A stretch of DNA of 64,000 bases, from positions 186,001-250,000 of IMG/VR virus record IMGVR_UViG_3300021959_006010, one strand, 5' to 3'. Positions 28,246 to 45,807 of this stretch are shown piece by piece. The stretch's first letter is position 1, and the number at the start of each line of letters is the position of its first letter. A program made the translations under genes and the position numbers. The notes under the pieces are model-generated. The model saw nothing but the letters and a program-made list of their open reading frames with translations, had not been told where the DNA came from and made no database searches.

Positions 28246-29445
28246 ATGATAGATAAAGAACCTTTTGAACAAGTAATAGAAACTCTAAAACAAGAAGGCA
28301 AATATCGAGTGTTTAACGATATACTTCGAGAAAGAGGAGATTTTCCAAAAAGTATATGGTATGGTCCGTATGCTATTAAAAATATTACTAATTGGTGTTC
28401 AAATGACTATCTCGGCATGGGTCAAAACAAAGTTGTTATTGATGCTATGCACACTGCACTTGACCAAACAGGAAGTGGGTCAGGTGGAACTAGAAACATT
28501 GGCGGCACATCACATTATCATGTAGCGTTGGAAAGAGAACTAGCGTCTTTGCATAGCAAGGATGGTGCGCTTTTATACTCGTCAGCGTATGTTGCCAATG
28601 AGTGGTCACTAATCGCTTTAAGCAAGATCATTCCCAACATTGTGTTCTTGAGTGATTCAAAAAATCACGCAAGCCTCATACAGGGTATCCGGCACAGTGG
28701 TGCTGACAAGTTAATTTGGCAGCACAATGATATGAGCGATTTAGAGGAGAAATTGGTACAGGTTGCCGCCAGGAATCAAGTCCCCTGCATTGTATTCGAG
28801 TCCGTATATAGTATGGATGGCGATGTGAGTCCAATTTCTTCGATCTGCGATCTAGCAGACGCTTATGGTGCTATAACCTATATTGACGAAGTCCACGCTG
28901 TAGGGTTGTATGGAACAGGTGGAGCAGGGTATCTAGAACATCTAGGTATTCAATCAAGAGTTGATATAGTTAATGGTACATTAGGTAAGGCCTTTGGTGT
29001 TCAGGGCGGTTATATTGCAAGTAACGGGACCGTCGTAGACGCAATTCGCAGTATAGCAAGTGGATTTATTTTTACTACCAGTATGAGTCCTGTGATTTGT
29101 GCTGGCGCCCTAGCATCAATTAAATATTTACGAGACCATAACGAACTAAGAGAACAACACCAAGAAAGAGCAGCTACACTAACACGTATGTTAAAAGAAG
29201 CTGATATCGAAATACATGCAGATGCATGTACCCATATTGTTCCTGTTATGGTGCGTGATGCTGTACGTTGTAAAGCCATGAGTGACTCGTTGCTTAACGA
29301 CTATGGTATATACATACAACCGATCAACTATCCGACAGTTGCGGTTGGAGAAGAGCGTCTTCGCATCGCGCCTACTCCGTTACATACTGATGCGATGATG
29401 AGCGACCTAGTTGTCGCACTAAGAAAGGTCTTTAATGCAAATTAA
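28246..29445 (+). CDS. hemA: 5-aminolevulinate synthase
   Basis: [57 protein letters not shown] (PLP Lys), IQPINYPTV. Confidence 0.95.
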
Positions 29446-29851
29446 AAAATACGCTTACATTGCACTCGGTTTATTTTGTGTAGGGATGGCTTACGTAGGA
29501 TTCGTAGTGCCTGGCATACCTTTTAGTATTTTCCTTGTTATTGCTGCTTGGGCATTTGCAAAGAGTTCTCCGAGACTACACGCATGGTTGTACAACCATC
29601 CTTGGTTTGGAGAGTTCCTTACAAACTGGACACACAAAAAAGTATTTCCTACCAAAGGAAAATACCTAATGCTGTTAGTAATGAGTAGCAGTTTAGCATT
29701 TCTTTGGTTCTCTACAGGCAACATCAAGGCTGTAGCATGGAGCGGCGGGTTTATGGTATTAGTTGCTATATGGGCTTGGCGTTACCCGGGTTCAGTTGAA
29801 GAACAAGAACGCAGAGTCAAAGAAGGTAAAAAAATTGCATGGCTCAAGTAA
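29435..29851 (+). CDS. DUF454/YbaN-family inner-membrane protein
   Basis: [38 protein letters not shown] motif. Confidence 0.85.
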
Positions 29852-30356
29852 GCCATGTACTCCAACTAGGATGTCTTATCTCAAATTCAATCTGCTTACG
29901 ATTATTTGCTAATTCGTAATAGGTTGGACGATAAGGCATCATTTTTGGTCTTATGTTTGTTTTGTTACCTTTTCGTGAGTTACAAGGGTTACAAGCACTG
30001 ACAATATTTTCCCATGCAGTTTTTCCTCCCTTTGAAATAGGGTGTACATGATCAAGTGTTAGTTCTTTTTGGGAAAATTTAGAGTTGCAGTATTGGCAGA
30101 CGAACATATCTCTTAGGTGGACGTTGTATTTGGAAAAACGTGGATTCCGTCGCCGCTTGTACATGTCTTTCAACATAATTACTGCGGGAACCCGTGTCTC
30201 CCAACTGCTACTTCGTACTATCCAATCATCGTACCATTCTAGTACGTGTACTTTCTCTAGCCAAAGATATGTGATTGCTTCTTTCCACTGAATAGTGGAG
30301 GGTGGTAGTAGTGATACAGGCTGTCCGTCTGCATTGAGTACAAGTGTGTCTGCCAT
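29844..30356 (-). CDS. HNH endonuclease (McrA-like)
   Basis: TLVLNAD, RDMFVCQYC, LTLDHVHP..GG, WENIVSACNPCNSRKG. Confidence 0.9.
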   Translation of the reverse strand: MADTLVLNADGQPVSLLPPSTIQWKEAITYLWLEKVHVLEWYDDWIVRSSSWETRVPAVIMLKDMYKRRRNPRFSKYNVHLRDMFVCQYCNSKFSQKELTLDHVHPISKGGKTAWENIVSACNPCNSRKGNKTNIRPKMMPYRPTYYELANNRKQIEFEIRHPSWSTWLT

Positions 30357-30385
30357 TGTGATCCTCTTGCGCTTTATACTATTAT

Positions 30386-30592
30386 TTATAAATCAATCGA
30401 ATCGACTGGTATGCAAACGGCCTGTTGATTGGTGTGGAAGTATCCGTCGCCTCGTCCGACTTGTAATGAAAGAGCTTCTCGTGCAGAAAAGCATTCGTAC
30501 ATATCTACAAAGGTAACTCCAGGACCCATAGCATTGATTGCTAGCGGTTCGTTTCCACTCACTATTATATAAACCAACATCCATTTGATCAT
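30386..30592 (-). CDS. Small exported Cys-containing protein
   Basis: Hydrophobic N-terminus; C..AR...AVC pattern; ATGA overlap. Confidence 0.55.
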   Translation of the reverse strand: MIKWMLVYIIVSGNEPLAINAMGPGVTFVDMYECFSAREALSLQVGRGDGYFHTNQQAVCIPVDSIDL

Positions 30593-30843
30593 GTTTCTTG
30601 CGCTCCGTCATTGAGCAACAAGAAACGTTTGAGTTTGTCTTCTCTCATGCAGTACACACGGTCAATGGACTTTCCGCCAAATTGCACCATCATGTCACGA
30701 CGAATTCCACTTGCATTAGATTGTACCCACGACTGACAAGTTTCTAAACTTTCGTGTGAGGGTTCAGTGTAAAGATAAGTGTCTTGTGTTCCGTCTGCAT
30801 ACAAACCTATGAGCAGTACAAACACATACCAGCTGCCTGTCAT
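30589..30843 (-). CDS. Small exported Cys-containing protein
   Basis: ATG overlaps the upstream TGA; hydrophobic N-terminus; two Cys. Confidence 0.55.
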   Translation of the reverse strand: MTGSWYVFVLLIGLYADGTQDTYLYTEPSHESLETCQSWVQSNASGIRRDMMVQFGGKSIDRVYCMREDKLKRFLLLNDGAQET

Positions 30844-31211
30844 CTTTCCGGCTCCCACAGCATTGGACCTGAGTAGGGTTCAAAACGATTTCCTACTGCT
30901 TGCATGCATGCTGTTCCGTCTGGGTATAGCACAACAAAACTAAAAGTGCCTGTGTCCGGATTAACAAACATCATACCACGTCCTTGAAACCATTCTCCAC
31001 TCACATGCTGACTTATTACTGTGCTTTCGAACAAAGGATTTTCTGTGTACTTTGCAATGTTAGTCATCAGTTGTTGAACACTGTCACACTGCTGTTGTAC
31101 ATAAAACAATCTAGGACCAGTCAAGGGCTGTTGGGGTTGTGGTTCTTCTTGGGCTGAGGCGGGCGCAACAATGCTGAGCAACACCAGACCAAGTGCAAGT
31201 TGCTTCCACAT
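30840..31211 (-). CDS. Exported protein with a signal peptide
   Basis: AGGAGA RBS; MWKQLALGLVLLSIVAPASA signal peptide; two Cys. Confidence 0.65.
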   Translation of the reverse strand: MWKQLALGLVLLSIVAPASAQEEPQPQQPLTGPRLFYVQQQCDSVQQLMTNIAKYTENPLFESTVISQHVSGEWFQGRGMMFVNPDTGTFSFVVLYPDGTACMQAVGNRFEPYSGPMLWEPER

Positions 31212-31242
31212 TGTAATCTCCTGTTGTAACAAGTATTTATGT

Positions 31243-31800
31243 TTAGGCTAGATAATTGTCAAACACTCTTGAGCTGTGAGTTTGTACTGCTGCGCTCCAT
31301 TGACTGAGACTGTTGGTTTCAAACACTATACTGTCTGTGGCAGCTGTGGGCAACCAAAGTCCCATGTCTATTTCTTGTTCAAGTTGTCCTGGGCGCCAAG
31401 TTGCACAACCTATGATCATTTTCCAATACACAGGTTCTACTTGTGTGGCCATGCGTTCCAACATCCAACGATCCGAAGTTATCGAATAGTGTTCGCCAAC
31501 TCGGCGTGTGTTTGCGCTTGACCATTCTGATGAGTGCAGTAGAAATGCTGCTCTAGGATTTGTTGGACCTCCGCGATAGACCGATCGATTCTCCAGTAGA
31601 TCAACAAACTCTCCTGGAAAGCCTTCGTGCAGTGTAGCATTAGGCAATGGTGCGTTTACTATGAGTCCTTGGGTGACATTTGGTGCGTGTTCGAATACGT
31701 ATACACATGTTCTCGCAAACTCACTGCCGTCCAGTCGGGGTGTTGCAATAAGTGCAGTGTCAGCCCAGTCATTAACTCCAATCGGGAAGTGGTCCGCCAT
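31243..31800 (-). CDS. YqgE/AlgH (DUF179) family protein
   Basis: LIATP..D..F.R.CVYVFEH...QGLIVN, YRGGP, GCATWRPGQLEQEI..G.W. Confidence 0.85.
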   Translation of the reverse strand: MADHFPIGVNDWADTALIATPRLDGSEFARTCVYVFEHAPNVTQGLIVNAPLPNATLHEGFPGEFVDLLENRSVYRGGPTNPRAAFLLHSSEWSSANTRRVGEHYSITSDRWMLERMATQVEPVYWKMIIGCATWRPGQLEQEIDMGLWLPTAATDSIVFETNSLSQWSAAVQTHSSRVFDNYLA

Positions 31801-32017
31801 ACTTCTTTCCCTTGATTTTCTTACCACCTACTTTGACACGTTTTTTGCCCAGTTTGTGACTTTTGTTTCCGTCACGTCGACGATAGCCTTGCGATTTGCA
31901 TGATGCGAGTGCGCTGGCACCCAGCGCCGAGTCCGGCTTTGATGATGTGCAAAGGCTGCGGCTAGCTTGCCAATCCTCTAGATCTTGTTCGCTTGTGAAT
32001 ACTTCTTCTACTCTCAT
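31772..32017 (-). CDS. Small basic protein with an MRVEEV N-terminal motif
   Basis: Follows a TAAATA promoter; Lys/Gly-rich C-terminus. Confidence 0.65.
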   Translation of the reverse strand: MRVEEVFTSEQDLEDWQASRSLCTSSKPDSALGASALASCKSQGYRRRDGNKSHKLGKKRVKVGGKKIKGKKYGGPLPDWS

Positions 32018-32031
32018 ACAGTTATTTAGTC

Positions 32032-32247
32032 TCAGCGATAGCGATCCGCAGGATTTTCCAACTGGTGATCATCATCCGAACTGAGACAGAATGTGAGTGC
32101 CTTTCTCGGACCCCTTGTGGTATTGATATTGATCTCCCCTGAACGCTCGTGAAATTCTATTTTGGTTATTTCTGCGGGCTCTCGATTCTTGCCTACAAGA
32201 ATGGTTTGGCCTAGTTCTAGATTTAGGCTGATATTGCGTAATGTCAT
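32032..32247 (-). CDS. Hypothetical protein
   Basis: AGGAGA RBS; 71 aa. Confidence 0.65.
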   Translation of the reverse strand: MTLRNISLNLELGQTILVGKNREPAEITKIEFHERSGEININTTRGPRKALTFCLSSDDDHQLENPADRYR

Positions 32248-32299
32248 GGGAGTTCTCCTTGATCAGTTTTTGAAACGTGTACAAATATTTATACTAAGT

Positions 32300-32617
32300 A
32301 TGAGTATGAATATGAAAAGCGAACCCACTGTGGGCAAACTAGAAACAGTCAACAAATACACACCCGAAACCATCACCTCAGGGCAATCATACGCATGTCT
32401 CTACTCAACACGCATACAGTTAACTGAAGATGGTCGCATACCAGAACCAGGCGAAGCTGCACCAAGATCAGAACCTCTAACTGGCTTTGCTGTGATACAT
32501 CAGAGAGATTTAAACAATCGTCGTCTTACAGTAGTAGATGTTAACCTTGCTATTGAACTAGTGGTAGATTTTGATGATGTGTGGGACATTGACGAAGCTG
32601 TATTCCAAGACGCCTGA
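32300..32617 (+). CDS. Hypothetical protein
   Basis: Open frame; start chosen among clustered ATGs at 32300-32312. Confidence 0.5.
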   Translation: MSMNMKSEPTVGKLETVNKYTPETITSGQSYACLYSTRIQLTEDGRIPEPGEAAPRSEPLTGFAVIHQRDLNNRRLTVVDVNLAIELVVDFDDVWDIDEAVFQDA

Positions 32618-32666
32618 AAGGCTTTAGCCCAAAACAAAAGACCCCGCTGTACGTGTAAATACTAGT

Positions 32667-32873
32667 ATGAAACTACTACTACACAGAGAACTCACATGGC
32701 GAGAAGAATGCTTTGTACACGCTCTTACAGGCGGTGACTATGACATCACACCTAGAGTTACTCATGACGAAATCTCACAGTACGAAATGCACATACCAAG
32801 TGATGCGCTTAATAGTAGAGACACTACACTACTGTTATTAGCACTAAGTGAATGTGTTACACGTGGCGAGTAG
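32667..32873 (+). CDS. Hypothetical protein
   Basis: ATG just after a TAAATA promoter at ~32657. Confidence 0.55.
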   Translation: MKLLLHRELTWREECFVHALTGGDYDITPRVTHDEISQYEMHIPSDALNSRDTTLLLLALSECVTRGE

Positions 32874-33189
32874 TAGAGGCCCCGCTGCTAATGCACGTAT
32901 AAAGGAAGAAAGCTCAAACCAACCTGAGTCTTATAGTAGTAGTATAGCTATAGAGGCAGGTTGAACACTGTGTAGTAACCCGTTGATGTGTATAGAGAAT
33001 ATAGTAGAGAAATATGAAAAAGTATTTGAACTATGCCTCCATCGTCCTCAGCCAACGGTTTAGAAATCCTATATAAATTCTTGAAAAAAGTGAAGAAAAA
33101 CCATGAACTACCACAATAGGCCCCGCTGCTATGCGTGTGTAAGCGGTCTAAGACGCCATTTTACCAGGATGGGACTGATTCTGCCCAAA

Positions 33190-33398
33190 GATCAATGACT
33201 TATATAGAGAACCTCAACCAGCCCCGCAGGGGCCCCTACACTACTACTACGCATAGACTCTACTACTACACTACTAACACTATAGATATCAATGACTTAG
33301 ACTACTACACTACTATAGTAGTTCAACACTACACTATAAGTCATTGATATTACTACACTACTATACACTACACTACTACTATACAAATCAATCGCTTA
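33190..33398. promoter_or_regulatory. Cluster of four IHF-consensus sites within ACTAC-rich repeats
   Basis: WATCAANNNNTTR matches at 33287-33299 (+), 33337-33349 (-), 33386-33398 (+); one-mismatch copy at 33190-33202; 14-bp palindrome ACTACTATAGTAGT at 33309-33322. Confidence 0.7.
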
Positions 33399-33514
33399 GT
33401 GTAGGGTGTTCAAGTTCTGGCGTCTTTTGGTTTCTTTTAAAAAAATGGTTGACAGGTTGTGGTTTTGATCATATACTATAAAGACAGTTAGGGTAACACA
33501 CAGAGGGAAATCAC

Positions 33515-33799
33515 ATGTTGAAATATCAGAATCTTGCACAGGTAGGCGACCGTATCAGAGCGTATGACTTCCGCGGTGGTCGTGACTACTACATAGAAGG
33601 GGTCGTTACTGCCAAAGGTCGTATTGAAACTCCTCGAGGGGTGTTGATGTATACAGGCTACACCGTTGACATAGATGTGGACACAATGCCTGGTGCTGGC
33701 CGTGTGGGAGATGTTGGTTATGTGCCGTTTGAAACAAGCTTGGACTACGATGAGAGAATTGAACTGGTGGACACGGAGTTTGCATACTGGGGCAGCTGA
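33515..33799 (+). CDS. Early hypothetical protein
   Basis: Own promoter and GAGGGA RBS. Confidence 0.75.
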   Translation: MLKYQNLAQVGDRIRAYDFRGGRDYYIEGVVTAKGRIETPRGVLMYTGYTVDIDVDTMPGAGRVGDVGYVPFETSLDYDERIELVDTEFAYWGS

Positions 33800-33896
33800 T
33801 GAAAAGAACACGCGAACACGAGAACAAAAAAACGGTTGACAGGCGTGTGTGTTGAGGCTATACTGTGTGTATAGTTAAAAACATAGAGGGCACACT

Positions 33897-34064
33897 ATGC
33901 AAACGAACACAAACGAATGGACAACACAGCAGAAGCGCAGGTTAGCGGATGCAGTATTTGAAGCAATTGCACTAGCAGAAGCACTGCGTTTAGACTACAG
34001 GGTGGATGCTGTAGCAGAATTTGCAGAGGACTTGTATGCTGCTGTAGAAGAAGACGCAGTATAA
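33897..34064 (+). CDS. Early hypothetical protein (55 aa)
   Basis: Promoter and GAGGGC RBS; MQTNTNEW... Confidence 0.7.
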   Translation: MQTNTNEWTTQQKRRLADAVFEAIALAEALRLDYRVDAVAEFAEDLYAAVEEDAV

Positions 34065-34148
34065 AAAGTTTAAAAAAACACTTGACAGTGTGCGTGTACT
34101 GTGTTATAGTATACGCATACTAAACATTGCAACAAAAGTGAGGGCTTT

Positions 34149-34598
34149 ATGCAAACAATTAACTACAGCACTACAGTAGCGGACTACTACGAGCACTTAA
34201 CAAATGAGTGTGCGGATGAGACACGTTTTACTATGGATGAACAGTGCTTTGTGCTTGAGTTTTTAGCAGACACACTAAACGCACTTACACAGCTAAACAG
34301 TGAAACACTACGTGAGGAGGGCAACTTTGCACGTATGCAAGACTGTGCGGAAGTAGCGGACAACTACGTAATGCTATTAAACAAGTGCAACAGTGAGTAT
34401 GATGGCGAGGACTGCTATACGTTTACGCTAGAAGATGCGGGTGCTGCTATTTGCAGTTATGACACAGAGTACAGGGAGTGCATATGCGAGCAGTTTGAAG
34501 ATGCGCTAAACGAGTACTTTGCACTTGTACAGCAAAACAAACTGCAAAAACTTGACATTGCAAACTGTTTAGCATGGCGTGTGTTTAACAGTTACTAG
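34149..34598 (+). CDS. Early acidic hypothetical protein
   Basis: Promoter and GAGGGC RBS; no Pro; no TC or CC in the coding strand. Confidence 0.75.
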   Translation: MQTINYSTTVADYYEHLTNECADETRFTMDEQCFVLEFLADTLNALTQLNSETLREEGNFARMQDCAEVADNYVMLLNKCNSEYDGEDCYTFTLEDAGAAICSYDTEYRECICEQFEDALNEYFALVQQNKLQKLDIANCLAWRVFNSY

Positions 34599-34672
34599 AA
34601 ACAAAACACTTGACAAGTACTGTAGCACATGCTATAGTACTTGTACACATTAAATGCATTAGAGGGCAAACT

Positions 34673-34885
34673 ATGCAAGTACACATACTACAACTACAAG
34701 GCACTGGCGACGACGAGTACGCATGGGAAAACGCAAGCGTTTTTGCAAGCTGGGAAGAAGCACAGGAACGTGCTGCGCAAATGAGCAAAGAAGACATAGC
34801 GGAGTACGGCGAAGCGTTTTGGATAATGGGCGAGAACATGCGCATTGAAACGCACGACTTAGTAGACAACAACTGGGGCTACTAA
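34673..34885 (+). CDS. Early acidic hypothetical protein
   Basis: Promoter and GAGGGC RBS; start revised to MQVHIL. Confidence 0.75.
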   Translation: MQVHILQLQGTGDDEYAWENASVFASWEEAQERAAQMSKEDIAEYGEAFWIMGENMRIETHDLVDNNWGY

Positions 34886-35009
34886 TACGCAGGCCCCGCT
34901 GCTATAAGGGCTGCTATACTACAGTATAGGCAAACTATACACAGTTGCACTTGCATTTTGGTGCAACTGTGTTATATTGTTAGCATAACGCATATAGGAG
35001 GGCAAACAT

Positions 35010-35324
35010 ATGCAAGCAACTGTAATTAAAACACTAGACAGTGCAGTGCGTGTAACACTAGTAGAAGATGACGCGGAGTGGCGTGCAGAGTTTGAAGAAT
35101 ACGGATACGACACAGACATGTGGGCTGCATACGGAGACGGAGATGTGTGGCGAGACAACGTACAAGTTACGCATACACTAAACGATGAAGAGTACGGCTT
35201 TATTTGCGGCAATAGTAGTGACAGACGTGTGTACGGCTTTACAGTAGATGTACACAGAGCAGAAGAAGCAGATGGCAACTTTAGCTTTTGGGTAACAGAA
35301 GAACAATACGAACAAATAGGATAA
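35010..35324 (+). CDS. Early acidic hypothetical protein
   Basis: GGAGGGC RBS; no Pro. Confidence 0.75.
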   Translation: MQATVIKTLDSAVRVTLVEDDAEWRAEFEEYGYDTDMWAAYGDGDVWRDNVQVTHTLNDEEYGFICGNSSDRRVYGFTVDVHRAEEADGNFSFWVTEEQYEQIG

Positions 35325-35395
35325 AAAGAGGTTGACAACGTGTGTATGCTATGCTATAGTGTACACACACTAACACAGCATAGAGAGGGCTTTTT

Positions 35396-35665
35396 ATGCA
35401 AAACACAAATACAAAAACTGCACGTAGTATTGTACGCAACATCCTAAAGCAAAACAATGTTATGTATTCCTCGCAAAGTTATACCGACAAATGTGCTAAT
35501 CCTGCATTACGTAACTTGTGCTTCCTAACAAAAAACTTAACGCCTGCAGTTGTGCAACAAATTTCCTCTGCGCTTAACGTTACAAAAGTGCATGCAACAA
35601 AGCCTATGTTTTACAATGTGCATCCGGATGCACGTTATTTGCGCATAGTGCATTGCGCAAAATAA
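35396..35665 (+). CDS. Early basic hypothetical protein
   Basis: Promoter and GAGGGC RBS; no Gly, Glu or Trp. Confidence 0.7.
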   Translation: MQNTNTKTARSIVRNILKQNNVMYSSQSYTDKCANPALRNLCFLTKNLTPAVVQQISSALNVTKVHATKPMFYNVHPDARYLRIVHCAK

Positions 35666-35672
35666 AACTCAA

Positions 35673-35716
35673 TAAAAACAAGCACTTAGCAGAAAAATTA
35701 TAAGTGCTTGTTTTTA
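35673..35716. repeat. 16-bp perfect inverted repeat with a 12-bp spacer
   Basis: TAAAAACAAGCACTTA (35673-35688) / TAAGTGCTTGTTTTTA (35701-35716); an 18-bp direct copy of the left arm lies at 45042-45059. Confidence 0.85.
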
Positions 35717-35801
35717 AACAAAACTTTTTGCTTTACAAATGCATAAACTTGTAGTATATTGTTTGTATAAGTTAACAAGCATACATGCAGAGGAGCACAT
35801 T

Positions 35802-36050
35802 ATGCAAAACACAAACTACGTATTTTTAAACGCACAAAACGCTGCAATTGTTGTAACAGTAAACAATGTAGTTGTTGCTACAGACGTACAAACAGCAGAC
35901 GCACTTGTACAAGTGTTTTTAACACACAACATTAATGTGCTTACAGACACTATTATGTGCAGCAGCAGCATAGATTTTGCTGAAGAGGAGGGCTTTGCTA
36001 CAGACGCTTGTGCGCATAATATTATAGAGGACGCTTTAGCACAGTTGTAA
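35802..36050 (+). CDS. Early hypothetical protein
   Basis: GAGGAG RBS; start revised to MQNTNY. Confidence 0.7.
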   Translation: MQNTNYVFLNAQNAAIVVTVNNVVVATDVQTADALVQVFLTHNINVLTDTIMCSSSIDFAEEEGFATDACAHNIIEDALAQL

Positions 36051-36152
36051 TATACTAAAGTATTGCAAGCACTATACTACGTAGTGCTTGCTTTTTTTGT
36101 AACTTGTGTTATATTGTTTGTATAACGTAACAGCAAATGCGAGGGCCGCAAC

Positions 36153-36503
36153 ATGCAAAACAACATTAAGCGTAACAGCGTAGTAGTAGTAAACTATAAA
36201 AACACACAGCGTTTAGCACTTGTTAAAAGTGTACGTGCTAACAACATGCTAAACGTAACTATGTATTTGTTTGCTAATGCAAGCATAGCTAGCGACTACT
36301 TAGTGCATGCAAGTACAGTAACGCTAACAAGTGTTAGTGCTAAACAGTTTACGCATTTAGCTAAAAGCTATCCCAACTATGCGTGTACTAGTGCTAACAG
36401 CAAACTATTGTTTAAGCTACAGCAACAAGCAGACGCAGCTTATCCGCAGTATGCAGCACTACGCAACAACTATGCAAAGTATACTAGTGCGTTTGCTGCA
36501 TAG
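36153..36503 (+). CDS. Early basic hypothetical protein
   Basis: GAGGGC RBS; 116 aa with no Gly, Glu or Trp. Confidence 0.7.
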   Translation: MQNNIKRNSVVVVNYKNTQRLALVKSVRANNMLNVTMYLFANASIASDYLVHASTVTLTSVSAKQFTHLAKSYPNYACTSANSKLLFKLQQQADAAYPQYAALRNNYAKYTSAFAA

Positions 36504-36583
36504 TACGCTTAAAAAACACTTGACAACTGTGTGTATGTGTGCTACTATGTACACATACACTAAAGCATAACGGAGGGCAGTTT

Positions 36584-36832
36584 ATGCAAAACACACAGTA
36601 CGAAAACGCAGTTATTGCTGCAATTGAAAATTTTGCAAACAGCATTGCAAATTGTGCGCACGACAGCGTAGTAGAAAACAACGACTACGCAATTACAGAC
36701 AGCATAGACAGCATTAACTTTTTGTTTAGCAACTACACAAAATACGACAGTGTACAAGCACTTGCAAACGCTGCACTAGACAGCACACTAGACACTGTAG
36801 TACGTGAAAGCATACATGCACAATTAACGTAA
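36584..36832 (+). CDS. Early hypothetical protein
   Basis: Promoter and GGAGGGC RBS; start revised to MQNTQY. Confidence 0.7.
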   Translation: MQNTQYENAVIAAIENFANSIANCAHDSVVENNDYAITDSIDSINFLFSNYTKYDSVQALANAALDSTLDTVVRESIHAQLT

Positions 36833-36903
36833 AAAAGTAGTTGACAACTGCGTGTACATATGCTATAGTGTATGTACACGTTAACAATGTAAGAGGGCAT
36901 CTT

Positions 36904-37236
36904 ATGTATTACATTTACGAGAACAGCACAACCTACATTATTGGCAAGCCGGACCGCAATGGTGTAGCCCGTCCGGATCATCGCCAGTCGTATAAGACTA
37001 TGGCCGCAGCGAAAGCAGCACTCACACGCATCTGCAAGGCAGAAGGCTTGTTGCCAACCGATCCCAACTATGCACTGTATCGCTATTCGATTGCAGAGGC
37101 CAGCTACTTCCACAGCATGATTGAAAAGAAAGTACTGCGTAAAGTACTAGAAGGCTTTGGTGGCAAGGAGTATTACGAACCTGTTAACACTCCTGCCTAT
37201 ATGTCACCTGCAAGCGAAACCTACTGGAGCATGTAA
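36904..37236 (+). CDS. Early hypothetical protein
   Basis: Promoter and GAGGGC RBS; start revised to MYYIYE. Confidence 0.7.
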   Translation: MYYIYENSTTYIIGKPDRNGVARPDHRQSYKTMAAAKAALTRICKAEGLLPTDPNYALYRYSIAEASYFHSMIEKKVLRKVLEGFGGKEYYEPVNTPAYMSPASETYWSM

Positions 37237-37364
37237 GATGGATCTACTCCAACGATACCCGAACGCACTCGAGCAGCTAGAAATCCTCAAAAAAGATTAT
37301 TTAGGGGTTGACAATTCTGTAGAGGAGTGCTATATTAGTAGTATAACAAATGGAGGGCAATCCA

Positions 37365-37529
37365 ATGCAAGTAGACCGCGAAAGACTGGAACGCATCGTC
37401 AAGATGGCAGAGAATCTCTACTCTGACGGTGAGTACCGCGATATGGTGTTCGATATACTGCGCACAGAACCTGAGCGTAGTGACAGCGACATTGCAAATG
37501 AATTAGCTATGCGTTGGTACGCTCCGTAA
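37365..37529 (+). CDS. Early hypothetical protein (54 aa)
   Basis: Promoter and GGAGGGC RBS; MQVDRERL... Confidence 0.7.
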   Translation: MQVDRERLERIVKMAENLYSDGEYRDMVFDILRTEPERSDSDIANELAMRWYAP

Positions 37530-37597
37530 AAAAGAGGTTGACACTGTAGCACTTCGGTGCTATAGTGTATGTATAAGTTAACAAAGAGGGCTACACA

Positions 37598-37810
37598 ATG
37601 ACAGATTATTTGTACAACACTGCTTACAAGCTAGGCTGTTACCAAGCTATTGCAGATATGATGCGCCGCGAGATCCGCAACCTTGACGCTGCACAAGCAG
37701 CAGACGACGAGTTTATGGCTGACTGGGCTATGCGCAACCTGCGCTCGCTTGCTACACAGCTTGACGAAGCAGAAGAAAAAATGAAAAAAGAGGTTGACAC
37801 TGTAGCATAG
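37598..37810 (+). CDS. Early hypothetical protein
   Basis: Promoter and GAGGGC RBS. Confidence 0.7.
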   Translation: MTDYLYNTAYKLGCYQAIADMMRREIRNLDAAQAADDEFMADWAMRNLRSLATQLDEAEEKMKKEVDTVA

Positions 37811-37859
37811 TGGTGCTATAGTATATACATAACGTAACAAAAGCAAGAGGGCTTACAAA

Positions 37860-38303
37860 ATGGGTACACGTTCAGCAATCGGTTACAAAACACCAGAAGG
37901 CAAAGTTCGCGCAAAATACAGCCACTACGATGGCTACCCTGCCTACACTGGCAAGATGCTGCAAGAGCACTACCAGGAGGCACGTAAGATTGCACAGATG
38001 GTAGAGCTAGGCGACCAGTCGTTTATCGCTCCAAACGTATTTCCAACAGACAAGTCGCACAGTTTTAACACGCCGCAAGAAGATGTGATTGTGTTTTACG
38101 GACGCGACAGAGGCGAGTCTAATGTAGACGCAAAAGACTTTGACACTGTGCAGGAGTTTGTAGACTACTACGAAGGCGCAGGCTGCGAGTACTTCTACTT
38201 GCACACAGCAAACGGTTGGATCGTACACGACCGCTATGGCGTAGGCAACGATGCTAACGGCTATCCTGTGTTTGACATGCTAGAAAATAAATTGCCTGCA
38301 TAG
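37860..38303 (+). CDS. Early conserved phage protein
   Basis: MGTRSAIG...YSHYDGYP..TGKMLQEHY...FYGRDRGE; promoter and GAGGGC RBS. Confidence 0.75.
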   Translation: MGTRSAIGYKTPEGKVRAKYSHYDGYPAYTGKMLQEHYQEARKIAQMVELGDQSFIAPNVFPTDKSHSFNTPQEDVIVFYGRDRGESNVDAKDFDTVQEFVDYYEGAGCEYFYLHTANGWIVHDRYGVGNDANGYPVFDMLENKLPA

Positions 38304-38371
38304 GAAAAAAGATGTTGACAGTATGCGCTTTTGAGTGCATACTGTTTATATAAGTTAGCAAAGAGGGAACA

Positions 38372-38545
38372 ATGAACGAACTGCTAGAAATGATTGAGGA
38401 CTTGGAAACAATCCAAACACTCACTATGCACCCGGCGCTAGACGAGACTGTTGAGCGCATCCTTGCAAAATACGAAGAGCGCCGCGAAGCATGGGAAGCA
38501 GAGCTTGAGCGCCAATACGAAATGTTCAAAGAGGAACTTGTATAA
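38372..38545 (+). CDS. Early acidic helical protein (57 aa)
   Basis: Promoter and GAGGGA RBS. Confidence 0.65.
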   Translation: MNELLEMIEDLETIQTLTMHPALDETVERILAKYEERREAWEAELERQYEMFKEELV

Positions 38546-38552
38546 ATGAATA

Positions 38553-38629
38553 GGGCCTTTAGCTCAATCGGTTAGAGCACCGGACTCATAATCCGTAGGT
38601 TGCGAGTTCGAGTCTCGCAGGGCCCACCA
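38553..38629 (+). tRNA. tRNA-Ile2 (CAU, lysidine type), reads AUA
   Basis: Cloverleaf with CAT anticodon, paired G1-C72, encoded CCA; resembles ileX-type rather than initiator tRNA. Confidence 0.8.
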
Positions 38630-38634
38630 AGTAA

Positions 38635-38711
38635 CTGCCCTTAGCTCAGCTGGATAGAGCAACAGCCTTCTAAGCTGTGGGTCGTAGGTTCGAATCCTAC
38701 AGGGCAGGCCA
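38635..38711 (+). tRNA. tRNA-Arg (UCU)
   Basis: Cloverleaf with TCT anticodon, GTTCGAATC T-loop, encoded CCA. Confidence 0.93.
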
Positions 38712-38715
38712 ATTA

Positions 38716-38799
38716 GCCCGCGTGGTGGAATAGGTAGACACAAGGGACTTAAAATCCCTCGCTTATGGCGTGCCAGTTCGAGTCTGGCCGCGGGCACCA
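38716..38799 (+). tRNA. tRNA-Leu (UAA)
   Basis: Class II cloverleaf with a long variable arm, TAA anticodon, encoded CCA. Confidence 0.93.
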
Positions 38800-38818
38800 A
38801 ACAAAGAGGAACAGGACA

Positions 38819-38974
38819 ATGATGTGTCCAGAATGTAACATGTCGAAACCTTGGACAAGCTCACGCTGTCCTAACTGCAACCAGAGTGTTGGCATTGTGT
38901 TCGGACTATGGTGGAACACACTTCGAGTGGTACTGACTCTTGCACTGTTCGTTTTTATTGTAAGTTTATTTTAA
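38819..38974 (+). CDS. Zinc-ribbon plus TM small protein
   Basis: CPEC...CPNC followed by a hydrophobic helix; GAGGA RBS. Confidence 0.6.
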   Translation: MMCPECNMSKPWTSSRCPNCNQSVGIVFGLWWNTLRVVLTLALFVFIVSLF

Positions 38975-39046
38975 AAAAGTGGTTGACAAAGGCAACAAAG
39001 GCTGTATACTGTACACAGTTAGATAGAAAACACAGAGGGCAACTAG

Positions 39047-40045
39047 ATGAATATCACTATCGTAGAAGGCACATATAAAATTCGAGGCAACGACACTTCA
39101 GTAGCAGGTCAAACGTTTCCTCTAGTAGAAGAGTTTAGAATGGGTAAGAATGGCGGGTACGTAACTGTTGATGGATCAGCAGTAGCAGGCTTCCCGGATC
39201 GTAATATCAAGATCAAGGTTGTAAGCGCCGACAGTTACGTACCCGCGGGGGAAGGCCCCGCTGATAGACAGCGCGAAGAAAGCGATGAAGAGATCATCGA
39301 ACGAATTCGCACTCGCTTTGACATGCTAAAAGAAATGACCAAGGCTGTCAAGAAGCAAGATGTCAAAGCAATGATCGTAAGTGGCCCTCCAGGTGTTGGT
39401 AAGAGCCACGGCGTAGAAGAAGTACTTGATCGCTATAACACTATGCAGATGTTAGGCGGAGGCAAGCAGTTCGAAGTTATCAAAGGTGCTATGTCGCCCA
39501 TTGGTTTGTACTGCAAGCTTTTCAAGATGGCAGACAAAGGTAAGGTTGTAGTGTTTGACGACTGTGACTCGATCTTCCAGGACGAGCTAAGCCTTAACAT
39601 CCTAAAGGCTGCTCTGGATTCAAAGAAAGATCGTTGGATCCACTGGAACACTGATTCGTTCAAGTTGCGCAACGAAGGTGTGCCAGACAAGTTCAAGTTC
39701 GAAGCAAGTGCGATCTTTATCACGAACCTAAAGTTTGACAAAGTCAAAGGTAAGATGCGTGAGCACTTGGAAGCACTAGAGTCACGCTGTCACTACATGG
39801 ACCTTACCATTGACACAGAACGAGACAAGATGCTCAGAATCAAGCAGGTCATTCGTGACGGTATGCTAGATAGCTATAAGCTGAGTGATGAGATCAAAGA
39901 AGAGATTGTAGACTTCTGCGATATTAATAAGAAGCGACTACGTGAATTGTCCCTAAGAACAGTTTTGAAAGTCGCCGATTTGGCACTTGCCTTTCCAGAT
40001 CGTTGGGAAGCATTTGCCGAAAATACCGTGATGCGTCGAGCCTAG
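39047..40045 (+). CDS. AAA+ family ATPase (early)
   Basis: Walker A GPPGVGKS, Walker B VVFDDCD, IFITN, ALESRC; promoter and GAGGGC RBS. Confidence 0.85.
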   Translation: MNITIVEGTYKIRGNDTSVAGQTFPLVEEFRMGKNGGYVTVDGSAVAGFPDRNIKIKVVSADSYVPAGEGPADRQREESDEEIIERIRTRFDMLKEMTKAVKKQDVKAMIVSGPPGVGKSHGVEEVLDRYNTMQMLGGGKQFEVIKGAMSPIGLYCKLFKMADKGKVVVFDDCDSIFQDELSLNILKAALDSKKDRWIHWNTDSFKLRNEGVPDKFKFEASAIFITNLKFDKVKGKMREHLEALESRCHYMDLTIDTERDKMLRIKQVIRDGMLDSYKLSDEIKEEIVDFCDINKKRLRELSLRTVLKVADLALAFPDRWEAFAENTVMRRA

Positions 40046-40063
40046 CTCCGCTGATTGGTAGAC

Positions 40064-40212
40064 ACTGTGAGCGGGTCCGCCCTCAACTTGCTCACAGTAC
40101 ATTGTGGTTGGACCGCCCTCATCCAACTACAGTAGAGTAGACGAACGCCCTCACGCTCTACTCTAATAGTGCCCTCGCAGTGTATGCCCTCACACTGCGG
40201 GGGCTTTTTTTT
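40064..40212 (+). ncRNA. Four-hairpin RNA with GCCCUC loops, ending in an intrinsic terminator
   Basis: Stems 40064-72/40090-98, 40103-12/40122-31, 40133-41/40157-65 and 40171-83/40192-204. Each loop carries GCCCTC. T8 run at 40205-40212. Confidence 0.8.
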
Positions 40213-40289
40213 GAAAAAAATGGTTGACAAGCTATAGGTTCGGTGTTATATTATTAGTATAAGTTGAAACACTGTAAGAGGGCAAACAG

Positions 40290-40484
40290 ATGATTAAGGT
40301 ACACAACAGAGGTTACGGAACTGGCGAAGCACGTTACATTCCGTTGAGCGAAGTAAACATCCACACACAAAAGATCTGTGAGTTTACAGGCGCTCCGTAC
40401 ATTATCTTCGAGCACAAAGACTATCCGTTGGGTTCTTTGAGTGCTACATTTGATGGCACCTACTGGGACTGTGATTTAGACTAA
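40290..40484 (+). CDS. Early hypothetical protein
   Basis: Promoter and GAGGGC RBS. Confidence 0.7.
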   Translation: MIKVHNRGYGTGEARYIPLSEVNIHTQKICEFTGAPYIIFEHKDYPLGSLSATFDGTYWDCDLD

Positions 40485-40495
40485 GGGAGAATACG

Positions 40496-40666
40496 ATGTA
40501 CGAAGATGAGAACGAAGATTTGATCATTGCTGTACTGGAGCAGATCCGCGAGGATGTCAGCAACGGAGACCTCACAGCAATCGAACAGTTGATTGAAATG
40601 CAGGCACCTTACGCACTGCTGAACTTCCTACCTGAAGAGAAACAGAAACAATTTATGGAAGATTAG
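40496..40666 (+). CDS. Early acidic hypothetical protein (56 aa)
   Basis: GGGAGA RBS; MYEDENEDL... Confidence 0.65.
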   Translation: MYEDENEDLIIAVLEQIREDVSNGDLTAIEQLIEMQAPYALLNFLPEEKQKQFMED

Positions 40667-40671
40667 GAGAC

Positions 40672-40805
40672 TATTTTCCGGATGCGTCCGTGTAGAGGAC
40701 CCGGCCGGCTAAAAGCACCATTGTTAGTTTCAGTCAAGCTAGAGCGGCAACGTCAATAAGGCCGTGCGGTGCGATTGGAGATACTAGGGGCGTATTCGGA
40801 AAATA
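40672..40805 (+). ncRNA. Unidentified structured RNA candidate
   Basis: 18-bp closing stem 40672-89/40788-805 with 3 G:U pairs; internal crossing pairings CGGCC/GGCCG and GCACC/GGTGC. Confidence 0.6.
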
Positions 40806-40885
40806 GTTTCAAATTAGGGGTTGACAAATCCCACAGTAGATCATATACTGTATATAACAGTTAGGAAATAGCAAGAGGGCAAATC

Positions 40886-41194
40886 ATGCAATTCGTAATT
40901 ACTACACAGTTCCTGGAAAACTACGGCGCACACTGCGAGGACGGTAAGTTCAAGTCCGGCAATGCATATTGGAAGATGAAGGGAGGCACAGACTACTGTG
41001 TGTCAGGTCTTGATCGCATCCAAGATGCGGTTGCGTTCGTGGCAGCCAAGGAGATGCATAATAGCATCGGCGCTAAGGAGTTTCCAGTAGAGTGGAAGAC
41101 CTATGCAGAGTGGGAGCGTGATCTTCCGGAAGACGAGGACTACAGAGAGTTCTTGCTCGAGCAACTGAAACACGTAGACCCGAGGGAGGTGTAA
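40886..41194 (+). CDS. Early hypothetical protein
   Basis: Promoter and GAGGGC RBS. Confidence 0.75.
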   Translation: MQFVITTQFLENYGAHCEDGKFKSGNAYWKMKGGTDYCVSGLDRIQDAVAFVAAKEMHNSIGAKEFPVEWKTYAEWERDLPEDEDYREFLLEQLKHVDPREV

Positions 41195-41195
41195 T

Positions 41196-41357
41196 ATGTT
41201 TCGTCAATATTTCGTATACTACGATGGTCGGTTCCAAGGAACTGTAATGGCACTTTCAGAACAGAGTGCGCTGGACAAAGGTTGCCAGATGGTAGGTGTG
41301 AGTGCTAGTGCCTACTCGGGTCGAGCACGCCGTTTGGTAGAAGTAATTCGCAAATAG
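41196..41357 (+). CDS. Early hypothetical protein (53 aa)
   Basis: GGAGGT RBS; MFRQYFVYYDG... Confidence 0.6.
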   Translation: MFRQYFVYYDGRFQGTVMALSEQSALDKGCQMVGVSASAYSGRARRLVEVIRK

Positions 41358-41422
41358 AGGTTGACAAACCGTCAATCCTTTGTTATAGTGTATGTATAAG
41401 TTAAACAAACGAGGGCAAAGAT

Positions 41423-41650
41423 ATGTTTAATGCACGAGACGAAGCACTAGAATTGGTAGAGAACGGCGTAGTGTCAGCAGAGTATTTGCTAACAGCCTGC
41501 CTCAAGTATATGTCAACAGACGATGTTGCAGACATGCTAGATGCTAACGAACTTTCCGATCGCTTCCTAGAAGATGACGAGCCAGACGTAGACGAGGCTC
41601 AGGAGTGGGAAGACTTTGGCGAAGTTGGTTACGAACCGGAGTATATCTAA
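41423..41650 (+). CDS. Early acidic hypothetical protein
   Basis: Promoter and GAGGGC RBS. Confidence 0.7.
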   Translation: MFNARDEALELVENGVVSAEYLLTACLKYMSTDDVADMLDANELSDRFLEDDEPDVDEAQEWEDFGEVGYEPEYI

Positions 41651-41811
41651 TGGCAGGAGCAGACAACACTCGTCGCATTTACATCACAGTCGCGCTGGAG
41701 ATACTGCGTGACGCAAACGAACAGGAAGTAATCGCAGAGTGCGATTACACCTTTGAACATCCCGACATTGTCGATACGGAAATTATGGGAGAGGACGAAT
41801 ACTATGCCTAA
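41650..41811 (+). CDS. Early acidic hypothetical protein (53 aa)
   Basis: TAATG overlap; MAGADNTRR... Confidence 0.55.
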   Translation: MAGADNTRRIYITVALEILRDANEQEVIAECDYTFEHPDIVDTEIMGEDEYYA

Positions 41812-42355: not shown

Positions 42356-42418
42356 AAAAAGAGGTTGACACAGTGAGCCATTGGTGCTATAGTATAGATA
42401 ACAGTTAGGAGGGCACCT

Positions 42419-42679: not shown

Positions 42680-42745
42680 GGGTTGACAAAACACTAGACT
42701 GAGTGCATACTGTATATATAGTTAGAAATTAGGAGGGCTCCTACA

Positions 42746-43164: not shown

Positions 43165-43228
43165 GGGTTGACAAAACCCCTAGCTGGTGGTATACTGTAT
43201 ATAACAGTTAGGAAACGAGGGTTAGAAA

Positions 43229-45802: not shown

Positions 45803-45807
45803 CTTGT

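What the first reader, a model, noticed from the sequence alone, without database searches (positions are those of the whole stretch)
33190..33398. IHF-consensus cluster within ACTAC iterons at the left edge of the early cassette: candidate origin, packaging site or genome end
Seen: three perfect and one near-perfect WATCAANNNNTTR sites. Two form a 14-bp inverted repeat (33286-99/33337-50) around the palindrome ACTACTATAGTAGT. Many (ACT)n/ACTACAC units follow, and the complementary TAGTAGTAG tract lies to the left (~32935). The block sits near the strand-switch region. Established: IHF sites cluster at lambda cos, att sites and replication origins. The functional assignment is inference.
Basis: partly seen in the sequence, partly recalled or inferred. 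Interest (0 to 1): 0.62.

Follow-up and report, generated by a model that had tools for sequence, protein, structure and literature searches.

The report
Jumbo-phage terminal-repeat boundary control region
The IHF-like sites and ACTAC repeats are real and form one arm of a noncoding control element, shared by over a hundred uncultured marine giant phages, that sits where read depth doubles, so it is most likely the start of a long terminal repeat (the physical genome end), with a layout that also resembles a replication origin.

Summary
The window is part of a 275-kb marine or estuarine jumbo-phage contig. Its helicase and large terminase are about 54% identical to those of Pseudomonas phage PA5oct.

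The 12-mer ATCAATGACTTA occurs three times in the whole contig, all within 33191-33348, and a fourth IHF-consensus site lies at 33386. ACTAC-type units and their inverted copies flank the sites.

The block is the right arm of a larger element (about 32925-33420). That element is built around a ~30-nt core (33018-33049) whose 20-mer is exact in more than 120 metagenome contigs. Across 83 lineages, IHF-consensus sites are about 12-fold enriched downstream of the core, and 12 lineages carry phased arrays of perfect DnaA boxes there. The repeat units recur inverted on the other side of the core.

In three metagenomes contig depth doubles at about 33140-33216 without a graph branch. The block is followed by a cassette of about 20 strong sigma-70 early promoters. 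PA5oct has a 39-kb terminal repeat holding early genes, which was also found by double coverage.

Best reading (0.45): this is the left boundary of a long direct terminal repeat, a nucleoprotein site for making genome ends. Main rival (0.3): an oriC-like lytic origin. IHF binding, exact termini and the right boundary remain untested.

The parts
32925..33015 (.). Left arm: inverted copies of the repeat units (TAGTAGTAGTATAG at 32934-32947, ATAGTAGAGA at 33001-33010).
   Evidence: I2, I4, I5, I9, I15. In 41 of 52 informative lineages the units repeated downstream of the core recur upstream mainly in inverted orientation.
33018..33049 (+). Conserved core AAAAGTATTTGAACTATGCCTC plus about 10 nt. 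There is one copy per genome.
   Evidence: The 20-mer is exact in 20 IMG/VR contigs and in at least 120 metagenome contigs. nhmmer finds a single copy in the 275-kb contig. It is absent from PA5oct and from cultured phages, and occurs in only 2 MAG contigs among bacterial genomes.
33050..33118 (+). Semi-conserved A+T-rich spacer with a TATATAAA motif at 33070-33077.
   Evidence: Alignments. The averaged A+T profile peaks at +25 to +100 from the core and then drops. It is not a good copy of this phage's TATAAATA late promoter.
33119..33135 (+). G+C-rich motif GGCCCCGCTGCTATGCG. A further copy lies at 32878 and others lie in the cassette.
   Evidence: In the relative L031 the same motif forms a terminator-like hairpin.
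33139..33216 (.). Interval holding the two-fold depth step, taken as the left boundary of a collapsed long direct terminal repeat.
   Evidence: table 8. In X1, contig depth is 17 up to 33531 and 34.8 to 37.8 beyond. In X3 it is 3.0-3.5 up to 33138 and 6.8-7.4 from 33216. In X4 it is 2.3 on the left and 3.2-5.0 from 33194. The X3 and X4 contigs start there with no other left context, and the X1 contig is unbroken across the interval.
33190..33202 (+). Site S1, GATCAATGACTTA (near-perfect IHF consensus).
   Evidence: AAAGATCAATGACTTA is conserved in L002 and L031.
33222..33234 (+). G+C hairpin GCCCC-GCA-GGGGC.
   Evidence: Relatives L002 and L031 have a hairpin of different sequence at the same place.
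33236..33385 (+). Array of ACTAC, ACTACACTACTA and CTATAG units.
   Evidence: (D1, D2, D7). CTACTAC-type 7-mers are the commonest repeated unit in many related lineages.
33286..33299 (+). Site S2, ATATCAATGACTTA, left arm of the perfect inverted repeat.
   Evidence: Conserved in L002 with one change.
33309..33322 (.). Palindrome ACTACTATAGTAGT between S2 and S3.
33337..33350 (-). Site S3, the inverted copy of S2.
   Evidence: TAAGTCATTG recurs in this orientation in many lineages.
33386..33398 (+). Site S4, AATCAATCGCTTA (perfect IHF consensus, of the AAATCAANNNNTTAG class).
   Evidence: The same class is seen in L024, L026, L028 and L033.
33439..33477 (+). First early promoter: A-tract, TTGACA, 17 nt, TATACT.
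   Evidence: It is the first of about 20 such promoters on the + strand up to about 44540.
33515..33799 (+). First gene of the early cassette (94 aa, no known family).
   Evidence: It has 12 relatives in IMG/VR, the closest at 76% identity.

Best explanation
The block 33190-33398 is the right arm of a noncoding element of about 500 bp (32925-33420). The element marks the left boundary of a long direct terminal repeat (DTR), so its right arm would be the first couple of hundred bases of the packaged genome. Directly behind it lies the early-gene cassette with its host-type promoters.

**Layout (shown).** A 30-nt core conserved across the clade sits between inverted arrays of short repeat units. 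IHF-type sites are embedded in the right arm.

**Proposed mechanism (inferred).** A phage protein, most plausibly the small terminase or another end-recognition factor, binds the repeat units on both sides. A bending protein binds the ATCAA-N4-TTA sites: host IHF, or a factor with IHF-like specificity. The folded complex directs the large terminase to cut between the arms, at about 33140-33194. It may also prime copying of the repeat, so that every packaged genome carries the repeat at both ends.

**What is shown and what is not.** The sequence features, their conservation and the depth step are shown. Protein binding, the cutting site and the right end of the repeat are inferred.
For: - **Depth step.** Contig depth doubles at the block in three metagenomes: 17 to 34.8-37.8, about 3.3 to about 7, and 2.3 to about 4. 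The deepest run shows no graph branch at 33139-33216, and the contigs that start at 33194 and 33216 carry no other left context. G+C content is the same on both sides.
- **Kinship with PA5oct.** The nearest characterised relative by DnaB helicase (55%) and large terminase (54% over full length) is PA5oct. PA5oct has a 39,080-bp DTR with 105 genes, many of them early. That repeat is annotated from double coverage, and the paper cites a PhageTerm report of the termini.
- **Repeat arrays at PA5oct's boundaries.** Arrays of short repeats lie just outside both DTR boundaries in PA5oct.
- **T5 precedent.** In T5-like phages a conserved untranslated repeat region straddles the terminal-repeat boundary, next to hypervariable genes transcribed away from it.
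- **Uniqueness and position.** The element occurs once in the contig. It sits exactly between a syntenic conserved module and the hypervariable early cassette in 11 loci.
- **Layout like known pac sites.** The core lies between inverted arrays, and bending sites are enriched about 12-fold. From my own knowledge, this is the layout of SPP1 pacL-pacC-pacR, P1 pac and lambda cosB with its IHF site.
Against: - Only assembled contigs were available, not raw reads. There are therefore no read-start pile-ups, and depth is one mean figure per contig. Two of the three runs are shallow.
- The right boundary of the doubled region was not found. Depth was seen only up to 36.5 kb, and the candidate gap 44923-45807 is not conserved in relatives.
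- A co-occurring strain that shares the cassette but not the left flank cannot be fully excluded. One run (X5) does hold cassette sequence without the left flank.
- Contig ends in other assemblies pile up near the core, but not at one nucleotide. G+C-rich hairpins or strain mosaicism could explain them.
- Phased arrays of perfect DnaA boxes in 12 related lineages look more like an origin than a packaging site.
- PA5oct's boundary arrays have no IHF consensus and no core, so homology with them is weak.
Confidence: 0.45

Rival explanations
1. The element is the phage's lytic replication origin, built like oriC or an iteron origin. Initiator-binding repeats (ACTAC units) and IHF bends open the DNA near the conserved core, and in some lineages host DnaA oligomerises on phased boxes. 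The phage DnaB-type helicase is then loaded there. The depth step would reflect extra copies made by rightward replication, or be unrelated.
For: - IHF-consensus sites occur in 52 of 83 lineages.
- 12 lineages carry 2 to 10 perfect DnaA boxes, nearly all in one orientation, many at an exact 11-bp spacing. All lie between the core and the first promoter, against 7 boxes in 354 kb of background.
- The element occurs once per genome.
- The phage encodes a DnaB-like helicase and an AAA+ loader-like protein nearby.
Against: - The window's own element has no DnaA box.
- There is no marked AT-rich unwinding element: the A+T peak is only 0.66.
- The repeat units are 5 to 17 nt at 39- and 48-nt spacings, not helically phased iterons.
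- No initiator gene lies next to the element.
- T5 shows that DnaA-box and repeat regions inside terminal repeats need not be origins.
- A ratio near 2 in three separate samples fits a repeat better than replication intermediates.
Confidence: 0.3
2. The element is a T5-like injection-pause or tethering region. Host DNA-binding proteins (IHF, and DnaA in some lineages) hold the entering DNA so that only the early cassette is expressed at first.
For: T5-like phages have conserved untranslated repeats, palindromes and 8 DnaA boxes in the terminal repeat, next to the pre-early genes. These have been proposed as the injection stop signal.
Against: - The element lies upstream of the cassette, at the putative entering end, not behind it. 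A stop there would leave the early genes outside the cell unless the other end enters first.
- Two-step injection is not known in this clade.
- The T5 proposal is itself untested.
Confidence: 0.07
3. The element is an upstream enhancer or regulator of early transcription. IHF bends at about -90 and further upstream would activate or time the first early promoter. From my own knowledge, IHF does this at lambda pL and Mu Pe.
For: S4 lies about 50 nt upstream of the -35 hexamer of the first strong promoter.
Against: - About 20 equally strong promoters in the cassette work without such a block.
- In relatives the distance from the sites to the first promoter varies from under 100 to over 700 nt.
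- The core and the inverted left arm have no role in this model.
Confidence: 0.08
4. The element is an attP site. The core would be the crossover sequence and the repeats would be arm-type integrase, Xis and IHF sites.
For: A core flanked by repeated arm sites and IHF sites is the lambda attP layout (my own knowledge).
Against: - No tyrosine integrase was found in the contig, which is 77% complete.
- Among 185,579 bacterial and archaeal species genomes the core 20-mer occurs in only 2 MAG contigs.
- The genome is a lytic-type jumbo phage of about 350 kb.
Confidence: 0.01

Closest known systems
Untranslated Repeat Region 3 (proposed injection stop signal) at the terminal-repeat boundary of T5-like phages
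   Same: - A noncoding region dense in direct repeats, inverted repeats and palindromes.
- More conserved than the neighbouring genes.
- Straddles a long terminal-repeat boundary.
- Lies next to hypervariable small genes transcribed away from it.
- Carries host-factor sites, with DnaA boxes in T5 and in 12 lineages of this clade.
   Different: - There is no sequence similarity.
- The window's element has IHF-type sites and no DnaA box.
- It has a 30-nt invariant core between inverted arrays.
- The phages are unrelated jumbo myovirus-type genomes.
- The function of the T5 region is itself unproven.
Long direct terminal repeat of Pseudomonas jumbo phage PA5oct (39,080 bp)
   Same: - Nearest characterised relative, with DnaB 55% and large terminase 54% identical.
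- The repeat holds many small early genes read by host RNA polymerase.
- The repeat is annotated from double read depth.
- Short-repeat arrays lie at both boundaries.
   Different: - PA5oct lacks the core and lacks IHF-consensus clusters at its boundaries.
- It has several other arrays inside its repeat.
- Only an 11-nt string (TAGATATCAAT) is shared with the window's block.
Phage packaging sites with bipartite protein-binding repeats and a bending factor: SPP1 pacL-pacC-pacR, P1 pac, lambda cosB with IHF site I1
   Same: Repeated short binding sites lie on both sides of a central region where cutting would occur, together with IHF-type sites. This comparison rests on my own knowledge of these systems.
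   Different: - Those phages use headful packaging (SPP1, P1) or cohesive ends (lambda), not long exact terminal repeats.
- No cutting or binding was tested here.
- The repeat units differ.
oriC and iteron-type origins (E. coli oriC, pSC101, R6K gamma, P1 oriR)
   Same: The combination of IHF site(s), repeated protein-binding units and, in 12 related lineages, same-orientation DnaA boxes at 11-bp phasing.
   Different: - The window has no DnaA box, no clear unwinding element and no adjacent initiator gene.
- The repeat units are shorter than iterons and are not phased.
Promoter-early stem-loop (PeSL) cassettes of T4-type hyperplastic regions
   Same: This applies to the neighbouring cassette, not to the block. 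Small genes each sit behind a near-identical strong early promoter, with gene-sized gains and losses between strains. The comparison is from my own knowledge.
   Different: The block itself is not a PeSL. It is unique in the genome and lies outside the repeated promoter units.

Membership tests
IHF binding-site cluster | Match to WATCAANNNNTTR | tested here: met
   Three perfect sites and one near-perfect site lie in 33190-33398. The consensus is about 12-fold enriched at the same relative place in 83 lineages.
IHF binding-site cluster | A/T-rich stretch 5' of the consensus | tested here: inconclusive
   A position matrix of 174 sites shows an A/T-rich 5' flank. S1 to S3 in the window have no A-tract. 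The unrelated contigs L014 and L015 have an A6 tract 8 nt upstream, which from my memory of the lambda H' site is the same arrangement.
IHF binding-site cluster | Bound and bent by IHF | not testable with these tools
   The conserved TGAC in the 'free' positions may point to another or a more specific protein. No HU/IHF gene was found in the phage contig.
Long direct terminal repeat boundary (T5, SPO1 or PA5oct type) | Two-fold read depth over the repeat with a sharp edge | tested here: met
   The left edge lies at about 33139-33216 in three runs. This is contig-level depth only.
Long direct terminal repeat boundary (T5, SPO1 or PA5oct type) | A second (right) edge where depth returns to single copy | not tested
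   The single read-laying run covered 30600-36500 only. Sequence comparison did not reveal the right edge.
Long direct terminal repeat boundary (T5, SPO1 or PA5oct type) | Pile-ups of read starts at fixed termini | not testable with these tools
   All holder runs are kept as contigs.
Long direct terminal repeat boundary (T5, SPO1 or PA5oct type) | Large terminase related to that of a phage with proven long terminal repeats | tested here: met
   The best match is the PA5oct type at 54% over 98% of the length. T4-type terminases match at about 30%.
Iteron or oriC-type replication origin | Three or more phased direct repeats of about 17-22 bp | tested here: not met
   The units are 5 to 17 nt long, and the longer repeat families are spaced 39 and 48 nt apart.
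Iteron or oriC-type replication origin | DnaA boxes | tested here: not met
   There are none within -300 to +1000 of the core in the window. They are present, and phased, in 12 of 83 related lineages.
Iteron or oriC-type replication origin | AT-rich unwinding element | tested here: inconclusive
   The only A+T rise is modest (0.64-0.66) at +25 to +100 from the core. The A-tract at 33439-33445 belongs to the promoter.
Iteron or oriC-type replication origin | Adjacent initiator gene | tested here: not met
   The flanking small proteins match no family, and no conserved gene follows the element.
attP | Integrase gene, and the core shared with a host attB | tested here: not met
   No tyrosine integrase was found. 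The core is absent from bacterial genomes except two MAG contigs.
Known RNA family | Match to an Rfam model | tested here: not met
   Nothing reaches threshold in 32600-33560. The best match is 20 bits against an 80-bit cut-off.

The most novel reading that the evidence does not exclude
The element is a combined origin and terminus. An oriC-like initiation site would sit at the outer edge of the long terminal repeat and fire into it. It would use a phage initiator on the ACTAC units with IHF, or host DnaA on phased boxes in some lineages. This would make the second copy of the repeat that each packaged genome needs, and the terminase would cut at the same complex. It would explain how long terminal repeats are regenerated from concatemers. 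The 30-nt core would be the clade-wide site for priming or cutting.
Probability: 0.2. Interest if true: 0.8.

Novelty: new variant of a known kind. Interest (0 to 1): 0.6.

Why it matters
Long terminal repeats carrying the host-takeover genes are typical of T5, SPO1 and several jumbo phages. The DNA signals that define their ends are still poorly known, and so is the way the repeat is duplicated.

This element gives a sequence-defined candidate for that signal. It has an invariant core, inverted arrays, and IHF-type sites or DnaA boxes. It recurs in over a hundred uncultured marine and estuarine giant-phage lineages.

It could serve as a marker for orienting and completing jumbo-phage assemblies. 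It points to dependence on host factors (IHF, DnaA) in a clade with no cultured member. It also offers a testable system for how ends and origins are organised in large linear phage genomes.

Tried and rejected
- **DNA similarity to cultured phages.** Near and distant searches of the region found no match. The core alone gave only chance-level matches.
- **Rfam.** No family matched.
- **attP.** Rejected, because there is no integrase and no host copy of the core.
- **Phage-encoded IHF or HU.** None was found.
- **Core in PA5oct.** Absent. There are also no IHF clusters at PA5oct's boundaries.
- **Second copy of the core or of the array, as a marker of the right boundary.** None was found.
- **Right edge of the cassette compared across 48 relatives of gene 45808-46245.** The context is not conserved, so this was uninformative.
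- **Contig ends as a proxy for physical ends.** Ends are enriched near the core: 5 of 18 IMG/VR contigs, and 9 metagenome contigs ending at +78 to +112. They do not fall at one nucleotide. They coincide with the start of a G+C-rich stretch, so the result is ambiguous.
- **A T4-type late promoter near the core.** The phage does use TATAAATA, but the copy near the core is poor.
- **Another strain with the same first cassette gene and a different left flank in IMG/VR.** None was found.
- **GC skew.** It follows transcription direction and gives no origin signal.
- **Pairs of GATCAATGACTTA in three unrelated viral contigs.** Given how many phages carry paired IHF-like sites, I judged these likely to be unrelated cases.

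Full report
**What the window is.** The window is bases 186001-250000 of a single 275,366-bp virus record with 37% G+C. CheckV rates the record 77% complete. It occurs in marine and estuarine metagenomes. It encodes ribonucleotide reductase, helicases, structural proteins, three tRNAs and a two-piece alphaproteobacterial-type tmRNA. Its DnaB-like helicase and its large terminase are most like those of Pseudomonas jumbo phage PA5oct (55% and 54% identity). Rak2-like phages and Atu_ph07 come next, and T4-type terminases match at about 30%. No cultured phage matches the region at the DNA level.

**The observation.**
- There are three perfect IHF-consensus sites and one near-perfect site.
- S2 and S3 form a perfect 14-nt inverted repeat round the palindrome at 33309-33322.
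- ACTAC-type units fill 33236-33385, and a complementary TAGTAG tract lies near 32935.

The loose IHF consensus is not enriched in the window as a whole (8 matches against 5.8 expected). The exact 12-mer ATCAATGACTTA, however, occurs three times in the whole contig, all within 158 nt. All five copies of ACTACACTACT lie within 555 nt. In an 8-mer redundancy scan the block ranks third in the contig. The other high-scoring windows I inspected look like coding repeats, and the second-ranked window lies inside a long ORF. The S2-S3 stretch could form a branched hairpin (-13.5 kcal/mol, z = -5.0).

**Setting.** The block lies in a 640-nt gap without credible genes (32874-33514). To its right, the first of about 20 near-consensus sigma-70 promoters (A-tract, GGTTGACA, 17 nt, TATACT or TATAGT) starts at 33449. 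These promoters drive a + strand cassette of small genes up to about 44.9 kb. To the left lies a module that is syntenic in 11 related loci. It holds:
- an aminotransferase;
- a DUF454 protein;
- an HNH endonuclease;
- an AlgH-like protein;
- two small - strand genes;
- one or two small + strand genes.

The genes to the right of the element differ from lineage to lineage.

**The block is one arm of a larger conserved element.**
- *Closest relative.* L002, a 236-kb IMG/VR contig, keeps S1, a G+C hairpin of different sequence at the same place, the ACTAC array, S2 and a degenerate S3.
- *The core.* About 170 nt to the left of the block is a ~30-nt core (33018-33049). The flanks of these contigs are otherwise unalignable. 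The core occurs once per genome. It is absent from PA5oct and from cultured phages. Among 185,579 bacterial and archaeal species genomes it is found only in two MAG contigs.
- *Enriched motifs.* After removing redundancy there are 116 lineages, 83 of them with at least 700 nt downstream of the core. In that downstream stretch:
  - IHF-consensus sites occur in 52 lineages (1.9 per kb against 0.155 per kb in the rest of the loci);
  - the exact 10-mer CAATGACTTA occurs in 42 lineages (72 sites against 23 in 354 kb);
  - two or more perfect DnaA boxes occur in 12 lineages (the background has 7 boxes in 354 kb).
- *DnaA boxes.* They are almost all in one orientation, often at an exact 11-bp spacing, and all lie between the core and the first promoter.
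- *Site consensus.* A matrix of 174 sites reads: A/T-rich flank, ATCAA, [T/G][A/G][A/G][C/G], TTA, G. The 'free' positions are therefore constrained, which is more than the classical IHF consensus requires.
- *Inverted arms.* The 7-mers repeated downstream of the core recur upstream mainly in inverted orientation (637 inverted against 333 direct copies; 41 lineages against 11).

**Depth step.** One call of read laying (5,901 bases, within the operators' limit) laid Logan contigs of four runs on 30600-36500.

| Run | Depth to the left | Depth to the right | Where the change falls |
|---|---|---|---|
| X1 (may be the source sample) | 17 (one contig, 30600-33531) | 34.8 and 37.8 | at 33505-33531, or unseen within the left contig, whose depth is a single mean |
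| X3 | 3.0-3.5 (up to 33138) | 6.8-7.4 (one later contig 4.6) | right-hand contig starts at 33216 |
| X4 | 2.3 | 3.2-5.0 | right-hand contig starts at 33194 |

- In X4 about 20% of the left side is assembled and about 60% of the right side.
- The X3 and X4 contigs that start at 33216 and 33194 carry no other sequence on their left.
- The X1 contig is unbroken across that interval.
- The only branch, at 33505, is explained by a co-occurring L002-type phage whose sequence is the 'loose end' seen there.
- G+C content is equal on both sides.

A step of about two without a branch, in three samples, is what a collapsed long terminal repeat gives. The same evidence underlies the 39,080-bp repeat annotated in PA5oct, which holds 105 genes, many of them early. 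I therefore place the left boundary of a long terminal repeat at about 33140-33194, between the two arms of the element.

*Caveats on the depth step:*
- depth is a single mean per contig;
- two of the runs are shallow;
- the right boundary was not seen;
- run X5 holds cassette sequence without the left flank, so cassette sharing between strains does occur.

**Comparison with known systems.**
- *PA5oct.* Short-repeat arrays lie just outside both repeat boundaries. It also has other arrays elsewhere, has no IHF cluster and has no core.
- *T5-like phages.* They have conserved untranslated repeat regions in the terminal repeat. One straddles the repeat boundary, carries eight DnaA boxes, and adjoins hypervariable genes transcribed away from it. 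T5 origins map elsewhere.
- *Packaging sites.* Binding repeats on both sides of a central region, plus bending sites, also describes SPP1 pac, P1 pac and lambda cosB (my own knowledge).
- *Origins.* The combination of IHF sites, repeats and phased DnaA boxes is the hallmark of oriC and iteron origins. The window's element, however, lacks DnaA boxes, a clear unwinding element, phased iterons and an adjacent initiator gene.

**Verdict.**
- *Most likely (0.45):* it organises the genome end at the left boundary of a long terminal repeat.
- *Main rival (0.3):* an oriC-like lytic origin.
- *Both together (about 0.2):* the two functions may coincide, for example an origin that fires into the repeat to duplicate it.
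- *Unlikely:* a T5-like injection pause (0.07), an enhancer of early transcription (0.08) and attP (0.01).

IHF binding remains an inference from sequence.

Noticed in passing
window 4771-5171 (-): The jumbo-phage contig carries a full-length two-piece (permuted) alphaproteobacterial-type tmRNA gene (Rfam alpha_tmRNA, 127.8 bits). ARAGORN gives the tag peptide as ANSNFKPEVFANFDEVAIAA. It hints at an alphaproteobacterial host.
   Followed up: no
window 33449-44540 (+): A cassette of small genes sits behind about 20 near-identical strong sigma-70 promoters (A-tract, GGTTGACA, 17 nt, TATACT or TATAGT), often followed by TGTATATAACAGTTAGG. Related contigs in the metagenomes show gene-sized skips between these units (table 5). 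This resembles the promoter-early stem-loop cassettes of T4-type hyperplastic regions.
   Followed up: partly
window 38553-38799 (+): A tRNA-Met(CAT), tRNA-Arg(TCT), tRNA-Leu(TAA) cluster lies inside the early cassette. The same three anticodons are among the tRNAs listed for PA5oct.
   Followed up: no
window 28246-31827: Host-like genes lie next to the element: a class I/II aminotransferase, a DUF454 protein, an HNH endonuclease and an AlgH-like DUF179 protein. They are syntenic in up to 11 related phage loci. An HNH endonuclease near a possible packaging site recalls the HNH helpers of HK97-type terminases (my own knowledge).
   Followed up: partly
window about 24000-46000 (contig 210-232 kb): This stretch has higher G+C (0.40-0.47) than the rest of the contig (0.31-0.39). 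It covers the element, the early cassette and the host-like genes.
   Followed up: no
whole contig (G000): The T4-type late promoter motif TATAAATA occurs 22 times. 13 copies lie within 60 nt upstream of a gene in the sense orientation, against 1 in antisense. The phage therefore probably uses a gp55-like late transcription system.
   Followed up: partly
G000:C1 ends (1-200 and 275167-275366): Strand skew and the unbroken end sequences suggest that both contig ends fall inside genes pointing in opposite directions. The right end would encode a glycine-rich stretch on the - strand. The assembly probably broke in repeated fibre-like genes, and about 23% of the genome is missing.
   Followed up: no
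L014:7986-8082, L015:4635-4730, L016 (oriented 4894-5012): Three unrelated IMG/VR contigs carry pairs of GATCAATGACTTA about 85-105 nt apart in noncoding DNA. In L014 and L015 an A6 tract lies 8 nt upstream, which from my memory matches the lambda H' IHF site.
   Followed up: partly
L035 (oriented, +312 to +405 from the core); L126 (+476 to +651): Relatives carry 7 to 10 perfect DnaA boxes (TGTGGATAA) in one orientation, many at an exact 11-bp spacing, between the core and the first early promoter.
   Followed up: yes
window 44923-45807: An 880-nt noncoding gap lies between the end of the early cassette and the convergent replication genes. It has a long A/T run, a G+C-rich stretch and a 14-nt direct repeat (ACACAATAAGCGTA, two copies). 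It is a candidate for the right boundary of the terminal repeat, but it is not conserved in relatives.
   Followed up: partly
window 32878, 33119, 34893, 39254: The motif GGCCCCGC(TGC) recurs only on the + strand, in and around the cassette. In relatives it forms terminator-like hairpins and is frequent throughout their cassettes.
   Followed up: no
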